Below, piece by piece: positions 54,086 to 61,968 of a stretch of DNA of 64,000 nt. Position 1 is the first letter of the stretch. Each line of letters opens with the position of its first letter. The notes below the pieces were generated by a model, which saw only the letters and a program-made list of their open reading frames with translations, made no database searches and was not told the origin of the DNA. The position numbers and the translations under genes are program-made. The stretch is from Salpingoeca rosetta (lineage: Eukaryota; Protista; Choanoflagellata). Location: NCBI GenBank assembly GCA_033442325.1, contig JAWQFM010000035.1:202246-266245 (forward strand). Direction: 5' to 3'.

Positions 54086-55192
54086 TCAATCGCACACTTG
54101 CTGGCTGCACGCGGAGAGGGGCTTCTTGTCCGCGCCTGTGCCTGCTTCTCCCGCCACTTTCGTGTCCTTGCCATCACCACCAACATCAGCGCCACCATCT
54201 GCATCAAACTTGGGGCCAGAGCAGCAGCACACGTCCATGGCGTGCTCAAATGCGCCGGCAAGCAGGTCCACAATGTACGCCGCAGACTCCTCATCCTGCA
54301 GCTTGTCGTTGCGAATCTCGATAATCACGTGCGGCAGGCCGCGCGCCAGCCCGTGCGTCGGCGTGGTGTATCCGGGGATGAGCTTGCCGGAGTACGGCTC
54401 GTTGTTTCCCACGCAATATCCGTGCTCATCTTCGCGCTTGCACAGGTATTCCAGCAGGGCGTCCGCGACGCTGCGATCAGAGTGCCACAGCACGCTCACC
54501 TCCCACGGCCGATGCTCCCCAACAACCTGGACGAGGAAAGAGACGGTGGACAGGACAAGATTAGGGTGGTGGTATTAGAAGTGTGAGGGGAACGGGCATG
54601 AGCGAAGCAGGGTAAGGGGGGAAGGTAGGGAGAGTGGGCAAGGAGTATTTGAATAGCAACAACAACAACGCGCGCGTGTGTGTGTGTGTGTGTGTTTGGT
54701 GATGTGGGTGTGGCAGCGGGACTGCGCAGCAGAGACAAACATGCACGTACACACACACATACACACATACACACACACATACACACATGCACACACATAC
54801 AGACGCATACACACTCAAAAGCACACACAGATACAGACACGCACCTTGAGCTTTGGCGTCATGGAGTGAATGGAGAAGATGACGGGTTTTGGCGATGTTG
54901 GCGCGATCACCACAGCATCACCACCGCTATCAACACCATCTTGTCCCTGGTCCTTGAACCACTGGTTGATGGTGGCGGATATGGCGTTGTGGTACGGCTT
55001 GAAGATGCCGCTCACGCGGTCATCGCGCTGCTGCTGCGTGAGGTGCTGGTTGCCCGGCACAGGCACGCCATCGGAGACGGGAGGGATGGAGGATGGGTCG
55101 TCGAGCTGTCTGTTGCAGTCGATCAGCAGCCGGCTGTAACCGCACACGACCCCGCGCATGTTCAGCCGCTCAGACAGCTGCCGCGTCACCTG

Positions 55193-55284
<92 letters not shown>

Positions 55285-55884
55285 ACTTGCGTGCATGCAG
55301 AGCAAGATCCCGTCTCCCTTCCACAACGCATGGCCGCAGGGATTTGACCCGCACCCAGCCGGCGCCAATGTCCCAGGCAATGTGATCCGAGAGGTGCTTC
55401 TTCTCCAAGCCAAGCCCATCTGATCGATGTGTGTGTGTGTGTGTTAAAAGGTGTGACGTGAATGATTTGATACTTCCACAAATTGATGCATGCACAATGT
55501 AAACACGCGCACACGCACCACAAACAGCACAGCACACACACACACACACGACACACACACCCTTCACACACATAATACACGACACACACACGCACACAAA
55601 ACAAACCGCACACAAACCGCACGCAGACGACCTTTGCTTTGCGTCTTACCCAGCTTTGCAGGGATGGTGTTGGATGCATGATCGCAAACAAGAACGCCGC
55701 GGGCCGTGCCCGCTGGGTTGATGACCTCGTATGGCTCGGAGAACATGGCACTCATGTCTGCGCGCTGTCGGGTTGAATGTGGTGGTGTGCTGGCGTGAGC
55801 GGTGTATATGCGACGCGTGGACAATCTCAACACAGCAGCTCTAGCGTGCAGCGATGACGTAGGACAACGCAACAAGGGCATCAT
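54086..55884 (-). CDS. N-formylglutamate amidohydrolase (FGase)-family hydrolase of bacterial type; exons 55884-55650, 55419-55355, 55189-54845, 54526-54086
   Basis: Motifs LVCDHASN, HIAWDIGA, YSRLLIDCNR, VPGN, KPYH, SIHSMTP, RPWEVSVLW, GNNEPYSG and IEIRND. The first ~43 aa (MMPLLRCPTSSLHARAAVLRLSTRRIY...) are R/S/L/A-rich with almost no acidic residues. A downstream Met is at 55755. Confidence 0.9.
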
Positions 55885-55927
55885 CCTCTCAAATGAATGA
55901 CAAGCAAGCAAGCTGACGAACACCAAG

Positions 55928-55986
<59 letters not shown>

Positions 55987-56719
55987 CGCACGCACGCCTC
56001 ACACACACACACACACCTCACGACAGCTTGGTTGGTGCCTCAGGTTTGGGCTGTGCTTCTGCTTGCTTCTCGTCTTGCGTGGCAGCTTCCTTCCTTCCTT
56101 GCTTGTGTCAGTCAGTTCTTGCTTCGCAAGTGATTGGTTGGTGGCAGCGTTGCATCATCATCAGCGTTCGCCATAACCATCGTGTTGCTTCGGTGCATCG
56201 TTGCGTTTGCTGCAGATTATTGGTGGATATTATCAAATAACGTTCCGCAATTTATGTCCTTGATGTGGCGAGCAACCGTTTTGCCACCCAAGATGCAATC
56301 AACCAATCATCATGGTTGGTGGCAAGCAAGCGATCAAGGCAAGGCGATCAAGGCAACGCTGGGCCTTAATGAATAAAGCAAGCAAGCGAGCAAGCAGTTT
56401 GTCTGCTGGCCACAACACGCAATGAACCTGCCGCATACACAAGTCACACACCATCACACACCATCACACACACACATACACACACCACACTCTTCTCGCT
56501 CGTCCGCAGACACTGTCAATCCGGAAGAACCCCCCTCTCTTCAGCATTTTCTCCTCCTCCTCCTCCTCAAACCCAAAGTGCACACTCACACTCTCACCAT
56601 TGTCGTTCCTCAGAGAACGCACACACACACACACACAACCACGCACACACACACACATGCACACACATACGCACACGCGAGATCATTACCCCACGTACCT
56701 TTGAGCGCTGTACGGCATC

Positions 56720-57194
56720 ATGGCTGATGAGTTCCAGCACATCCATTGGACCCACGGGCCAGACAAGGACTTTGTTGTCATCCCCAGCCTTGTAAGGCAT
56801 GTGTGTGTTGTGTTTTGTTTTGTTTTGTTTTGTTTTGTTCGTGCGCGCAGTGCAATGCAATGATCACTCCAACTCACTCCCCCCCCCATCCAACCTCTCA
56901 TGTTTGCTAGACGTTTGACAATGGCGAGCTTGAGAAGCTGAGGGGCGTGCATCACTATGAGGAGCGACTGCTGTTCTCGCTCATCCTGTTGCGTTACAGC
57001 AACACACGGCTGGTGTACCTCACTTCGATGCCCATCCCCAGCGACATCCTTGACTACTACTTCTCCCTCCTCCCACCAGATATCCCCATCCACCGCGAGA
57101 ACCTCCTCATGCTCAGCACGCAGGACAGCTCCCCCGTCTCCCTCAGCGAAAAGGTGTTGCATACACGCACGCAGGGAAGAGCACACAGGGAAGA

Positions 57195-57251
<57 letters not shown>

Positions 57252-57569
57252 CGTGTGCGTGTGTGTGTGTGTGTGGCTGTGTGTGGCTGTCTGTCTTTCC
57301 TTCAGTGCCCTTCGATTTCGTCTCCTTCCTCTCACCTCACCTCTCCTCTCACGCCCCCCCCTCTCTCTCTCTCCATCATCACCACCGCAACCACCAGCTG
57401 CTGCGCCGGCCGCGGCTGTTGAATCGGATCCGCACGTATGTGCGGCCGAATGCGGTGATGGCGGTGTTTCGCAGCACCCCGCTGGAGATGCGCATTGCAG
57501 ACTACCTCGGCATGACACTCCACTCCGTCAGACCAGACCTCATGTTCTGGGTACGTGCGGTTTGGATGT

Positions 57570-57614
<45 letters not shown>

Positions 57615-58345
57615 TGCGATTCTGTGTGTGTGTGTGTGTGTGTGTGGATATGTGTGTGTGTGTGTCTGAGTTTCTATGTGTGTGTGCTTGCGTTTCTGTG
57701 TGCGCGTGTTGTGTCTGCGTTCCTGTGTGTGTGTGTGTCTGAGTTTCTATGTGTGTGTGTGTGTGTGTGTGTACTTTAATGTGCACACGTCTTTATATCC
57801 CCTGTCAACATGTTATCTCACAACTCGCAACAACCACACCGCGCCACACACTCACTCCCACACACTCACCCTCCATGCCTCTTCAATCAATCACCCCCAC
57901 CAGGGCGGAAAGGATGGGTCGCGAGTGGCGTTTGCCAACAGCGGCGTGCCATGCCCGGACGGTGTGCGCCTGACACACAACGTCGATGTGCTGGTGGACC
58001 GAATCGCCACCCTCCTATTGCGCAACCCAACAACAAAGCGGGTCGTCGTGAAACTCAACGAAGGGTTCTCTGGCGAGGGCAACGCCATCCTGCACGTGGA
58101 CCACATCACCTCCAACCCAAAGCTCATGCAGCCAGCACGCAGCGCCGCCGGTGATAGCAGTGGTGACAGCAGTGGTGGTGGGAGTGGCGACAGCAGGGGT
58201 GACAAGGGCGGCCCTGTCGAGGCGAAGCGTGCGCAGAACAAAGAGAACGACACCAGCAGCAAAACCAGCGGCGGCATCGCTACCAACAACAACACAAGCA
58301 GCGGTCGCAGCGCTGCCACTGCCTCAACTGCCACCCCAACCGATG

Positions 58346-58400
<55 letters not shown>

Positions 58401-58414
58401 GCAGCAGCAGCAGC

Positions 58415-58451
<37 letters not shown>

Positions 58452-59857
58452 CCGCGTGTCGTTTGCGTCCGAAGCAACGGTGGTGACCACCACCACGACA
58501 ACAACAGCGACAGAAGACGCATACACCGACACACACATTGGCCACAAGCAACAGCAACAAGGAGACGAAGAAGAGCATGTGGAGATCCGCGTACAGGTGC
58601 AGCAGCAAGTCAAAGAGGTAACAGCGGTGACAACAGTGCAAGATAACGAGGAAGAAGAACAAGAGCAAGAGCAAGAAGACCTGCCAGCATCACCAACATC
58701 GTCCGCGCCCCGCCCCGTGTTCAGAGCAACACCAGCGCTGCGTGCAGCCGTGTTGGCGGCACTGGCCCACGACGACCCGACGGATGACAGGCGCACAATG
58801 CGCTTCTGCTCGACTGTGGAGCGCTGGGAGACGTTTGTGCCGAAGATTGCGACCTTTGGCGCCATTGCGGAGCTGTTTGTGGAGGGCGCCACCACCTCGC
58901 CGAGCGTGCAGTGTGTGATTGACGCGCAGTCGAACGTGGAGGTGGTGTCCACGCATGAGCAGGTGCTGGACGGGCAGATATACAAGGGGTGTCTGTTCCC
59001 GGCGAGGGACGAGTACAACAAGCAGCTGCAGGAGTACGGTCGCAAGGTGGCGCAGTTCCTGGCCGACCAAGGCGTTGTCGACAACCTCGGCATCGACTTC
59101 ATGTGCGGCCCAAACGCGGATGGGTCATGGAACATTCAGGCGCTGGAGATCAACCTGCGGCTGTGTGGAACCACGCACCCGTTCATGACGCTGAAGCTGC
59201 TGACGGGCGGCGGGCTGGACCCAATGTCCGGGCTGTACATGACGCAACGCGGGGAGTACCGCTACTACATTGCGTCAGACAACATGGAGGACCCGAGCCT
59301 GCAGACGCTCACGCCGCAGGACATTATCGACATCTTCAAGGAGAACGACCTGCACTTCCACCACGACACGCAGGTCGGCGTTGTGTTCCACCTGCTGGGG
59401 TGCCTGAGCGAGTGGGGCAAGGTTGGCGTCACGGCTATCGGCACGTCAAGGGACCACGCCAAGGACCTGTTTGACCGCGCACAGCACCTCCTCATCACGG
59501 TCAGTTAGGCAGGTGGGGTGGAAGAGCTTGGAAGAAGGGTGTTGTGGTGGTTTGTGTTGGGTTGGGTCATGTTGTGTGGTGTTGTGTGTTTGTATCCTGT
59601 GTATGCGCACATGCGTGTTGAGAAGCACGCGTGCCCTACCATACGACACGTGCTCCCATATCGCACCATCATCGTCACCGTAACCCCACATGACATCACA
59701 CCCACGCCCACGCCAAATACATGCACGTGTACAGGAGGCGCGTCGAATCCCGCCGCTGTGGACGCCGACGATGGAGACAGACGCCTGCCCGTATCTCTGT
59801 CGCCGCCGCGTGTCTGTGGCCGCACCAGAGGCAGCGAAGCTCGCCGCGAGACGCTGA
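56720..59857 (+). CDS. ATP-grasp amide/peptide ligase, PGM1-related (IQCH-like ATP-grasp family); exons 56720-56791, 56911-57153, 57398-57550, 57904-59499, 59735-59857 (728 aa)
   Basis: VVIPSL...HYEERLLFSLILLR, LVYLTS, WGGKDGSR, VVVKLNEGFSGEGNA, SPSVQ, STHEQVL, YKGCLFPA, GIDF, EINLRLCGTTHP, YYIASDN and GVVFHLLGCLSEWGKVGVTAIG. All introns are GT-AG and phase 0. Without the last splice the ORF stops at 59508. Confidence 0.88.
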
Positions 59858-59893
59858 CTACATCGTGCTTGTTGTGTGTGCGCGTGTGTGCGT

Positions 59894-59969
<76 letters not shown>

Positions 59970-60433: not shown

Positions 60434-61786
60434 TCAGAGGCAGAGGGAGAAGAAGGTCGTGTCGATGGTGAGAACGCTCGTGGTGTGAAACGGAATGCCA
60501 ACAATCGTGCCGTCACCAACAGCGACACCATCCGACCACAGCGTGGGCGCGTCTCCGGTGCACGAGCCTGTGCTGGACCAAGCTCCAGCCACGAACGTGC
60601 ACGAGTGCAGCGGGTACGCGTCTAGCACGACTGCGGTGTTGGTGCTGCTGTCAGGGTCGATGACGAGCGGATATGGGGCGTCACGCGCGATAGCGTACAC
60701 CCGGCCGTCCCGCCCAAGCGCACCGCCAGACCACGTCCACCAGCCATCCACGTCCAAGGGGAGAGGTACCATGGACGTCTGCTGCGTGGACGGGTCGATG
60801 ACGAGCACCGCGCTGGCCTTGTATGGGATGCCGTAGATGAGGCCGTTGCCTGCAAGTACGCCGCCGTACCACTTCCAGTTGTCGCCCGGACCGCTGCGCA
60901 GGAAGGCCGCATTGGGCGAGACATCCAGGTAGGAGACGGTGTGGTCGAGGGTGGAGATGGCCAGCACGGCATCCGCAGACGCAGGCATGGCGTAGATGTA
61001 CCCGTTGTCGGCAAGCACCCCACGCGCCCACTTGGTAGGCCCATAATCGATAAAGGCACCATTGTACTTGGGCAGGTCGATGGTGGAGAACCCGCCGGAC
61101 AGCACGTCAAACACCATGATCACGGGCGAGCCCCACGGGATGCCGTAGATGATGGTGTTGTTCTTGCCAGCAACAACCCCGCCGCTCCACGACCAGAAGG
61201 TGTCAAGTATCGGCGACAGCGCCTTTGATGACACCACCTCGTCCTCCAATGAGAGCATGAGCAACGCACCGCCCCTCACGGGCATGCCGTACAGGTGGTT
61301 GTCGCCCGCCTCCACCAGCGTGTACCACATGCCGTCCAGCATGTTTGCCGGGAGCGCAATCTCGCGCACGGTCTGCGTGTCTGGCTCGATGACGAGGATG
61401 GAGTCCGCCCTGTCTGGTGCGGCGTAGACGTTGCCGTTGCTGGCGAGCACGCCGCCATTCCACTTGAACTGGGCCGTGTTGGAGGTTGTCAGCGTGGCCG
61501 TATCCACGCCGTCTCGCAGCGCTGACCTACACGTCTTCGTCGTCACGTGGCGCAACAGCTCAAGCTCTCGCAACACATCCACGCCGTTGACGTAGACACG
61601 GCCGGAGACGTCACCCGTGGAGATGTGCAGGTTTCCCACGTCGTCCCCGACAATCTGCGACTTTGGTGTGGTGGACGCGCCCCCTGCATCTGCTGCGGCG
61701 AGCACCGCCTGCGGAACCACCACCACCACCACCACCACCAGCAGCAATGCGCGAGTCACAGCCAGCCGCAACGACAACGCACGCAT
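60434..61786 (-). CDS. Secreted 7-repeat beta-propeller-like protein with intronless CDS (450 aa)
   Basis: Signal peptide [30 protein letters not shown], a short GNLHI...RVYVNGVDVL-helix module, then seven repeats of W-x-G-G-V-L-A-x-N-G-x-I-Y-x-x-P...V-L-V-I-D-P. The ORF is uninterrupted and has coding-like GC3. Confidence 0.85.
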   Translation of the reverse strand: MRALSLRLAVTRALLLVVVVVVVVPQAVLAAADAGGASTTPKSQIVGDDVGNLHISTGDVSGRVYVNGVDVLRELELLRHVTTKTCRSALRDGVDTATLTTSNTAQFKWNGGVLASNGNVYAAPDRADSILVIEPDTQTVREIALPANMLDGMWYTLVEAGDNHLYGMPVRGGALLMLSLEDEVVSSKALSPILDTFWSWSGGVVAGKNNTIIYGIPWGSPVIMVFDVLSGGFSTIDLPKYNGAFIDYGPTKWARGVLADNGYIYAMPASADAVLAISTLDHTVSYLDVSPNAAFLRSGPGDNWKWYGGVLAGNGLIYGIPYKASAVLVIDPSTQQTSMVPLPLDVDGWWTWSGGALGRDGRVYAIARDAPYPLVIDPDSSTNTAVVLDAYPLHSCTFVAGAWSSTGSCTGDAPTLWSDGVAVGDGTIVGIPFHTTSVLTIDTTFFSLCL

Positions 61787-61828
61787 GATCTGTGTGTTGT
61801 GTGTGTGTGTGTGTGTCTGTGTGTGTGT

Positions 61829-61865
<37 letters not shown>

Positions 61866-61968
61866 TGTGTGTGTATGTGTGTGTGTGTGTGTCTGTGTGT
61901 GTGGGCGTGTGCTTGCCAGTGCGGCGATGACGCGATCGCGGCCACGGCGTTTGGCAGAATTGCACAGA

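What the first reader, a model, noticed from the sequence alone, without database searches (positions are those of the whole stretch)
54086..59857. Divergent pair of bacterial-type amide ligase and amidohydrolase: candidate eukaryotic peptide make/break module
Seen: an FGase-family hydrolase and a PGM1-type ATP-grasp ligase are head-to-head, with ~835 bp between start codons. They have only 3 and 4 introns, against 20-30 in the large housekeeping genes nearby. Known: PGM1 is the pheganomycin peptide ligase, related uncharacterised ligases are common in cyanobacteria and actinobacteria, and FGase-like Zn-peptidase-fold enzymes co-occur with ATP-grasp/carboxylate-amine ligases in bacterial gene neighbourhoods. 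Inference: these are horizontally acquired, co-regulated enzymes that form and cleave the same amide (a small peptide, gamma-glutamyl or N-acyl metabolite, osmolyte or nitrogen store). This would be an undescribed metabolic mini-cluster in a close relative of animals.
Basis: partly seen in the sequence, partly recalled or inferred. Interest (0 to 1): 0.82.

Follow-up and report, generated by a model that had tools for sequence, protein, structure and literature searches.

The report
Head-to-head amide ligase and amidohydrolase genes
In the choanoflagellate Salpingoeca rosetta, a gene for an enzyme that makes amide bonds sits back-to-back with a gene for an enzyme that cuts them; the two came from different sources, and relatives in other organisms suggest, but do not prove, that such enzymes work as a pair.

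Summary
Window 54086-59508 carries two intact, spliced, single-copy S. rosetta genes placed head to head. One is an FGase-family Zn amidohydrolase (PTSG_10703, 318 aa, 3 introns, minus strand). The other is a PGM1/BesA-type ATP-grasp ligase (PTSG_10704, about 690 aa, plus strand).

- The FGase nests inside Pseudomonadota.
- The ligase sits in a eukaryote-rich clade (chytrids, diplonemids, Percolomonas). An AU test rejects a choanoflagellate+cyanobacteria clade (p=0.009).
- No bacterial group examined has the two genes adjacent. The pair was most likely brought together within the choanoflagellate lineage, not inherited as a module.

- In two diplonemids and one unidentified organism, the orthologous ligase is fused to an AstE/AspA-type deacylase.
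- 20 of the 30 best alphaproteobacterial FGase homologues lie directly upstream of a YbdK/GCS2 carboxylate-amine ligase.
- The FGase model shares its fold with hydrolases of glutamyl amides.
- The closest characterised ligase is BesA, named L-propargylglycine--L-glutamate ligase.

A 2021 HGT screen flagged both genes as "foreign" individually. The two text searches run here found no paper describing the pair.

The parts
55650..55755 (-). FGase gene (PTSG_10703), coding exon 1, starting at the annotated ATG at 55755
   Evidence: Model built. The translation is identical to P0121.
55355..55419 (-). FGase coding exon 2 (HIAWDIGAGW motif)
   Evidence: with GT-AG borders. The motif is conserved in alignment A3.
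54845..55189 (-). FGase coding exon 3 (SRLLIDCNR and SIHSMTP motifs). It includes a lineage-specific insert of about 17 aa.
   Evidence: PF05013 at 52.9 bits. Alignment A3.
54086..54526 (-). FGase coding exon 4 (RPWE and IEIRND motifs) plus a C-terminal tail of about 45 aa predicted to be disordered, then the stop codon
   Evidence: PF05013 at 35.2 bits. pLDDT is below 50 for residues 284-318.
55756..56719 (.). Divergent intergenic region of 964 bp, a candidate bidirectional promoter. It contains CA repeats and no other convincing ORF.
   Evidence: Sequence and ORF list. Promoter function is inferred and was not tested.
56720..56791 (+). Ligase gene (PTSG_10704), coding exon 1 in my model (MADEF...VVIPSL)
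   Evidence: It aligns with the N-terminal '...ILVIPSLS' region of cyanobacterial homologues.
56911..57153 (+). Ligase coding exon 2 (HYEERLLFSLILL motif)
   Evidence: alignment A1.
57398..57550 (+). Ligase coding exon 3
   Evidence: with GT-AG borders.
57904..59508 (+). Ligase coding exon 4: the ATP-grasp core (KLNEGFSGEGNA, ALEINLR ExN motif) and the PGM1_C domain, then the stop codon
   Evidence: PF24923, PF18105 and PF02655. BesA structure 8YI6 matches at E=2.4e-26.
58099..58797 (+). In-frame low-complexity insert of 233 aa (48 Gln, also Thr/Ala/Ser-rich) inside the ATP-grasp domain. Bacterial homologues have about 25 aa at this position.
   Evidence: Inserts at the same position occur in P0001-P0003, including the transcriptome-derived P0003.

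Best explanation
Two real, intact eukaryotic genes of different ancestry lie head to head. They most likely act as a functionally coupled pair of amide ligase and amidohydrolase.

The ligase (PTSG_10704) is an ATP-grasp carboxylate-amine ligase of the PGM1/BesA family. It would activate a carboxylate, probably on Glu or Asp, as an acyl-phosphate and join it to an amine. The neighbour (PTSG_10703) is a Zn amidohydrolase of the FGase family. It would hydrolyse an amide on an acidic amino acid: either the ligase's product, giving turnover, or a precursor, giving substrate supply.

Shown here: gene structure, family membership, conserved catalytic motifs, separate phylogenetic origins, and analogous ligase-hydrolase couplings in other lineages. 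Inferred: that the S. rosetta pair shares a promoter and a pathway, and that the amide involves a glutamyl group.

The FGase entered a choanoflagellate ancestor from a proteobacterium. The ligase belongs to an older, patchily distributed eukaryotic clade. The adjacency most likely arose within the choanoflagellate lineage.
For: - Gene models and identity.
- Catalytic motifs kept. The FGase keeps all 42 invariant columns of A3. The ligase keeps the E-x-N and other invariant columns of A1.
- FGase model: pLDDT 82, TM 0.88 to Atu2144. Next come true FGase, poly-gamma-glutamate hydrolases, succinylglutamate desuccinylase, CCP5 and aspartoacylase.
- Closest characterised ligase: BesA, named L-propargylglycine--L-glutamate ligase.
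- Fusions of the orthologous ligase with an AstE_AspA catalytic domain: P0215 (842 aa), P0346 (Diplonema ambulator, 839 aa) and P0208 (833 aa), with HGxE and DIHS motifs intact. The first two fall within the 27-tip eukaryote-rich clade (87/94) that holds S. rosetta, and P0208 within the 43-tip clade (97/93).
- FGase-GCS2 operon: 20 of 30 alphaproteobacterial loci.
- S. rosetta gave no match for GCS2 or AstE/AspA. The ligase and FGase in this pair are therefore the only partners of these kinds found in the genome.
- Separate origins.
Against:
- Adjacency was not found beside the ligase in a chytrid or in two unidentified eukaryotic contigs.
- Contigs from choanoflagellate relatives are too short to judge synteny.
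- The fusion partner elsewhere is AstE/AspA, not FGase. The bacterial partner of FGase is GCS2, not an ATP-grasp. The support is therefore by analogy only.
- A profile comparison of FGase with the fused AstE/AspA domain was not significant.
- Two neighbouring genes can be adjacent by chance.
Confidence: 0.5

Rival explanations
1. Chance neighbours. Both are genuine enzymes, but they act in unrelated pathways and merely share an intergenic region in a compact genome.
For: - The two genes have different evolutionary origins.
- No FGase lies near the ligase in 80 cyanobacteria, a chytrid and two other eukaryotic contigs.
- Ligase and FGase are not associated in cyanobacteria. Four of 151 genomes have both, always on different contigs, against about 5 expected by chance.
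Against: - The ligase is fused to a Zn deacylase of the same fold class in at least three sequences.
- The FGase subfamily is tightly linked to an amide ligase in Alphaproteobacteria.
- For single-copy genes among about 11,600, the prior chance that one flanks the other is about 2 in 10,000. That is my estimate, and the pair was picked out after the fact.
Confidence: 0.35
2. One reading: a bacterial make/break module acquired horizontally, with a shared donor or a pre-existing bacterial linkage.
For: - The best prokaryotic hits are bacterial for both genes.
- Both score as 'FOREIGN' by Alien Index in Matriano 2021.
Against: - The donor groups differ: cyanobacteria-like versus Pseudomonadota.
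- The ligase clusters with other eukaryotes, and the AU test rejects choanoflagellates+cyanobacteria (p=0.0087).
- PGM1_C was found in 2 of 401 Pseudomonadota.
- No adjacency was seen in any bacterial locus.
- Both gene families are classed 'Ureukaryote' by OrthoMCL and were excluded from that paper's final list of 175 HGT candidates.
Confidence: 0.03
3. The ligase is the choanoflagellate orthologue of the animal IQCH protein, vertically inherited and unrelated to small-molecule metabolism.
For: - It matches the Pfam domain named after IQCH.
- It belongs to a eukaryotic clade found mostly in flagellated protists.
- An Atlas cluster named 'IQCH-like ATP-grasp' is among its look-alikes.
Against: - It has no IQ motif.
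- Its PF24923 score (55 bits) is no higher than those of bacterial homologues (46-93 bits in the bacterial members scanned).
- Matriano's NR comparison found no metazoan hit.
- It keeps the PGM1_C domain and is 45-51% identical to cyanobacterial enzymes.
Confidence: 0.07

Closest known systems
BesA, L-propargylglycine--L-glutamate ligase (PDB 8YI6; NCBIfam NF042917), and PGM1, the pheganomycin peptide ligase
   Same: It has the same ATP-grasp family architecture: PF24923 plus the PGM1_C domain. The C-terminal half aligns to BesA at E=2.4e-26 with the ExN region conserved.
   Different: - It scores 98 bits against an equivalog cut-off of 750, so it is not a BesA orthologue.
- PGM1 itself was not matched at E<0.01 with the C-terminal 272 aa.
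- It has a 233-aa low-complexity insert.
- It is a spliced eukaryotic gene with no bes or pgm cluster around it.
Cyanobacterial 'peptide ligase PGM1-related protein' (uncharacterised; found in 55 of 151 Cyanobacteriota genomes)
   Same: Identity is 44-51% over the catalytic half, and the domain order is the same.
   Different: It forms a separate clade from the eukaryotic sequences. The cyanobacterial genes stand alone, with no conserved neighbour and no FGase nearby.
Diplonemid ligase-AstE/AspA fusion proteins (P0215, P0346) and P0208
   Same: The ligase is orthologous and falls within the same eukaryote-rich clade. It is coupled to a Zn amidohydrolase of the Zn-exopeptidase fold class.
   Different: There the coupling is a gene fusion and the hydrolase is of the AstE/AspA type. 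In S. rosetta it is a separate, divergently transcribed FGase-type gene, and no AstE/AspA was found in the genome.
Alphaproteobacterial FGase-GCS2 (YbdK-type carboxylate-amine ligase) operon; structure Atu2144 (PDB 2ODF)
   Same: It is the same FGase subfamily: 43-47% identity, and TM 0.88 to Atu2144. It is also paired with an amide-forming ligase.
   Different: The partner ligase there has a different fold (glutamine-synthetase-like GCS2) and is co-directional in an operon. S. rosetta gave no GCS2 match.
HutG, N-formylglutamate deformylase of histidine degradation
   Same: It belongs to Pfam family PF05013 and has the same fold.
   Different: It gives no match to the HutG equivalog TIGR02017. 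Even its bacterial kin score 28 bits against a cut-off of 279. The public name 'N-formylglutamate amidohydrolase' is therefore a family label, not an established function.

Membership tests
FGase family (Pfam PF05013) | Profile score above the gathering threshold | tested here: met
   Exon ORFs score 52.9 and 35.2 bits against a cut-off of 28.9. P0121 carries PF05013.
FGase family (Pfam PF05013) | Conserved motif residues (CDHA, SRL.D.NR, HS.TP, E.R) | tested here: met
   All 42 invariant columns of the 15-sequence alignment A3 are present in P0121. That these are metal or catalytic residues rests on my knowledge of the family.
FGase family (Pfam PF05013) | FGase-like Zn-exopeptidase fold | tested here: met
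   The model has pLDDT 82. Foldseek gives TM 0.88 to 2ODF and E=3.8e-10 to 2Q7S.
HutG N-formylglutamate deformylase (equivalog TIGR02017) | Equivalog-level score | tested here: not met
   P0121 gives no NCBIfam hit. Its homologue P0367 scores 28 bits against a cut-off of 279.
PGM1/BesA-type ATP-grasp ligases | ATP-grasp domain PF24923 plus the PGM1_C domain PF18105, both above threshold | tested here: met
   55 bits (cut-off 27) and 45 bits (cut-off 22.5).
PGM1/BesA-type ATP-grasp ligases | ATP-grasp Mg/ATP-binding motif (E-x-N) and other invariant core residues | tested here: met
   E153, N155, R157, D136 and others are invariant across A1 and A2, S. rosetta included.
BesA equivalog (NF042917) | Equivalog score of at least 750 bits | tested here: not met
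   97.7 bits for the C-terminal half. Cyanobacterial P0041 scores 141 bits.
Animal IQCH orthologue | IQ calmodulin-binding motif | tested here: not met
   A regular-expression scan of the 690-aa model found none.
Animal IQCH orthologue | Groups with metazoan IQCH in a tree | not testable with these tools
Indirectly, Matriano 2021 reports no metazoan hit for PTSG_10704.
Co-transferred bacterial gene module | Both genes nest in the same donor group | tested here: not met
   The FGase is in Pseudomonadota. The ligase is in a eukaryotic clade, with cyanobacteria the nearest named bacteria.
Co-transferred bacterial gene module | Homologues are adjacent in bacteria | tested here: not met
   None of 80 cyanobacterial loci has an FGase within 10 kb. 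Four cyanobacterial genomes have both genes, always on different contigs. PGM1_C was found in 2 of 401 Pseudomonadota.
Eukaryotic metabolic gene cluster / co-regulated divergent pair | Co-expression from the shared intergenic region | not tested
The expression tables of the 2021 paper were truncated in the stored copy.
Eukaryotic metabolic gene cluster / co-regulated divergent pair | Adjacency conserved in related species | tested here: inconclusive
   Choanoflagellate-like contigs L007-L009 are 1.8-5.2 kb, too short to judge. The metagenome scan found no close relatives.

The most novel reading that the evidence does not exclude
The S. rosetta pair and the diplonemid ligase-AstE/AspA fusions mark an undescribed eukaryotic pathway. 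It would build and hydrolyse a small glutamyl or aspartyl amide, such as a gamma-glutamyl-amino acid, an N-acyl-Glu type osmolyte, a nitrogen store or a signal. In choanoflagellates the ancestral AstE/AspA-type hydrolase would have been replaced by a proteobacterial FGase that landed next to the ligase (non-orthologous displacement followed by clustering).
Probability: 0.25. Interest if true: 0.7.

Novelty: new variant of a known kind. Interest (0 to 1): 0.5.

Why it matters
Pairings of a ligase with a peptidase or amidohydrolase are familiar in bacterial operons. This report shows such a pairing in a eukaryote, a close relative of animals, built from one bacterial import and one older eukaryotic gene. 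An independent gene fusion in diplonemids mirrors it.

If the coupling is real, three things follow:
- It points to an unknown small amide metabolite in choanoflagellates, chytrids and diplonemids.
- It gives a first functional handle on a ligase family that is conserved but uncharacterised in many cyanobacteria.
- It offers a clean example of a eukaryotic mini-cluster formed after gene transfer.

If the coupling is not real, the result still corrects the origin story. The ligase is not a choanoflagellate-specific cyanobacterial import.

Tried and rejected
Splicing, 5' ends and co-expression are therefore unverified by reads.
- Synteny in relatives. The contigs carrying the closest eukaryotic homologues (L007, L008, L009) are too short. 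The JGI metagenome scan returned only distant, short contigs.
- IQCH comparison. No IQCH sequence was obtainable, and a paper search for IQCH plus ATP-grasp found nothing.
- Literature. Iyer et al. 2009 on amidoligases, and papers on BesA, are not held. No paper text mentions PTSG_10703 or PTSG_10704.
- Conserved neighbours of the cyanobacterial ligase. Only lineage-restricted synteny of at most 27 of 80 loci was found, with no functional partner.
- Profile-profile comparison of FGase with the fused AstE/AspA domain. It was not significant (probability 0.1%). Their relationship rests on the structure search alone.
- ORFs directly after the ligase copies in eukaryotic contig L094. They gave no Pfam match.
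- Rejected idea: mitochondrial (endosymbiotic) origin of the FGase. Among the closest relatives recovered, only three full-length eukaryotic sequences and one metagenomic fragment appeared. They nest among mixed alpha- and gammaproteobacteria, which fits a later transfer better.


Full report
**What is there**

The window is Salpingoeca rosetta (assembly contig C35).

On the minus strand, four exons with canonical GT-AG introns encode a 318-aa protein: 55755-55650, 55419-55355, 55189-54845 and 54526-54086. It is identical to the database entry P0121, named 'N-formylglutamate amidohydrolase [Salpingoeca rosetta]'. Matriano et al. 2021 list it as PTSG_10703.

On the plus strand, four coding exons give a 690-aa ATP-grasp protein: 56720-56791, 56911-57153, 57398-57550 and 57904-59508. 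The public model, PTSG_10704, has 728 aa and 4 introns.

Pfam assigns PF05013 to the first gene, and PF24923, PF18105 (PGM1_C) and PF02655 to the second. The start codons are 964 bp apart. Each family occurs once in the assembly.

**Are the enzymes intact?**

- The FGase keeps every invariant column of a 15-sequence alignment, including the CDHA, SRL.D.NR, HS.TP and E.R motifs.
- Its AlphaFold model has mean pLDDT 82. It superposes on Atu2144 (2ODF, TM 0.88) and on a true FGase (2Q7S).
- The ligase keeps the ATP-grasp E-x-N motif and about 50 other columns that are invariant across cyanobacterial and eukaryotic homologues.
- The ligase carries a 233-aa Gln/Thr/Ala/Ser-rich insert (58099-58797) where bacteria have about 25 residues. 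Relatives P0001-P0003 have inserts at the same place. P0003 is transcriptome-derived, so such inserts are carried into mRNA in at least one relative.

**Origin of the ligase**

- A word-based search gave three eukaryote-like hits at 63-67% identity, followed by more than a hundred hits of which every named one but one (a Chloroflexi MAG) is cyanobacterial, at 44-51%.
- The 80 best loci in species-level prokaryote genomes are all cyanobacterial.
- An exhaustive search of 50%-identity representatives changed this picture. In the trees, the choanoflagellate group (100/100) sits among sequences that cluster look-ups identify as eukaryotic.
  - Chytrids: Quaeritorhiza and Kappamyces.
  - Diplonema ambulator, and a EukProt record prefixed 'Hpha'.
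  - Percolomonas, an MMETSP transcript, and another EukProt gene.
  - Two contigs carrying THOC2, RCC1, RPC5 and cohesin-loader genes.
  - Sources.
- In the careful tree, a 43-tip clade with 97/93 support holds all the known eukaryotes and no sequence identified as bacterial; many of its tips are unidentified. The cyanobacteria lie outside it.
- Forcing choanoflagellates and cyanobacteria together costs 48.6 log-likelihood units (AU p=0.0087). One caveat: I named that group after seeing the tree.
- The ligase is therefore a member of an older, patchy eukaryotic family and not a recent cyanobacterial import.
- This agrees with Matriano 2021. They scored it 'FOREIGN' with no metazoan hit, placed its orthogroup at 'Ureukaryote', and dropped it from their 175 candidates.
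- Whether animal IQCH belongs to this clade could not be tested. The protein has no IQ motif, and its score on the IQCH-named Pfam model is no better than that of bacterial members.

**Origin of the FGase**

- Beyond two EukProt proteins (55-57% identity) and one metagenomic fragment, all close relatives are bacterial at 40-47%. Every one that carries a name is from Pseudomonadota: Caenispirillum, Terasakiella, Roseospira, Novispirillum and Competibacteraceae.
- In a 90-sequence tree the eukaryotic trio (100% support) hangs on a long branch. It lies inside successive well-supported proteobacterial nodes (87, 97, 97 and 99).
- This fits a transfer from a proteobacterium into a choanoflagellate-lineage ancestor.
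- The two genes therefore have unrelated histories.

**Are bacterial homologues neighbours?** No.

- None of the 80 cyanobacterial ligase loci has an FGase within 10 kb. The positive controls were detected.
- The cyanobacterial gene has no neighbour conserved beyond lineage-level synteny.
- Among 151 Cyanobacteriota genomes, 55 have the ligase and 14 have an FGase. Four have both, always on different contigs, against about 5 expected by chance.
- PGM1_C was found in only 2 of 401 Pseudomonadota.
- No FGase lies within 10 kb of the ligase in the chytrid or in the two other eukaryotic contigs.

**Evidence for functional coupling**

Three independent observations bear on this.

1. P0215, P0346 (Diplonema ambulator) and P0208 are fusions of this ligase with a C-terminal AstE/AspA catalytic domain. 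That domain belongs to the succinylglutamate desuccinylase / aspartoacylase family, and its HGxE and DIHS motifs are intact. These sequences lie inside the same eukaryote-rich clade as the S. rosetta ligase.
2. The bacterial kin of the FGase sit immediately upstream of a YbdK/GCS2 carboxylate-amine ligase. This holds in Terasakiella, Novispirillum and Caenispirillum and in 20 of the 30 best alphaproteobacterial loci.
3. After its own family, the FGase model's nearest structures are poly-gamma-glutamate hydrolases, succinylglutamate desuccinylase, the tubulin deglutamylase CCP5 and aspartoacylase. All of these cut amides on Glu or Asp. The ligase's closest characterised relative is BesA, named L-propargylglycine--L-glutamate ligase. 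From memory, BesA makes a gamma-glutamyl dipeptide (Marchand et al. 2019).

S. rosetta gave no match for GCS2 or for AstE/AspA. Each enzyme's usual partner class is thus missing from the genome, while the other kind of partner lies next door. This is analogy, not proof. A sequence-profile comparison of FGase with the fused AstE/AspA domain was not significant.

**What could not be done**

I sent nothing from those places to any search tool afterwards.
- No co-expression data, read-level splice confirmation or 5' ends are therefore available.
- Synteny in other choanoflagellates is undetermined.

**Verdict**

- The claim of a jointly transferred bacterial module is wrong.
- The idea of a make/break (or supply/use) amide pair is plausible, at about 50%. 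It is now backed by fusion and operon analogies.
- The adjacency is best seen as assembled within the choanoflagellate lineage from one proteobacterial import and one older eukaryotic gene.
- Both genes were individually flagged in a published Alien-Index table. The two text searches run here found no paper describing the pairing, the fusions or the FGase-GCS2 link in this context.

Noticed in passing
window 55756-55884 (minus strand): An in-frame ATG lies 43 codons upstream of the annotated FGase start. It would add an Arg/Ala/Ser/Thr-rich extension with 7 basic residues and only 1 acidic residue, which resembles a mitochondrial presequence. The two EukProt homologues lack such an extension.
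   Followed up: partly
P0215, P0346, P0208 (protein ids; no window coordinates): The PGM1-like ligase is fused to an AstE/AspA-type deacylase domain in two diplonemids and one unidentified organism. No paper search was run on this fusion, so I cannot say whether it has been described.
   Followed up: partly
P0225, P0223, P0213, P0254: Bacterial members of the ligase family carry a C-terminal WD40 beta-propeller. They include Myxococcaceae, CPR1/'Xenobia' and two unnamed sequences. This hints at a protein or peptide substrate in those lineages.
   Followed up: no
L094 4349-5707 and 6899-8257: An unidentified eukaryotic contig carries two tandem copies of the ligase. Each copy is followed directly by an ORF with no Pfam match (325 and 451 aa).
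   Followed up: partly
window 56422-56719: The extra 38 N-terminal residues in the public 728-aa model of PTSG_10704 appear to derive from Thr/His-rich translation of a CA repeat. Homologues align from the ATG at 56720.
   Followed up: partly
L004 13545-14528: Terasakiella has a second, more distant FGase paralogue (327 aa) directly upstream of a GNAT acetyltransferase. This is another pairing of an FGase with an amide-forming enzyme.
   Followed up: no
window 54560-54840, 55190-55290, 55900-56010, 57180-57290, 57560-57790, 59880-59960: (CA)n/(GT)n microsatellites fill almost every intron and flank of both genes. Metagenome gene callers read through equivalent repeats in relatives (P0001, P0123), producing spurious Thr/His or Cys/Val tails.
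   Followed up: no
window 60434-61945 (minus strand): The next gene downstream is a 503-aa ORF with a hydrophobic N-terminal stretch and only a weak, sub-threshold DUF5074 match (21.5 bits). Its function is unknown.
   Followed up: partly
cyanobacterial loci L013-L092: The 'PGM1-related' ligase is single-copy, about 50% conserved and present in 55 of 151 Cyanobacteriota genomes. It has no conserved neighbour, so it is a widespread cyanobacterial enzyme with no known function.
   Followed up: partly
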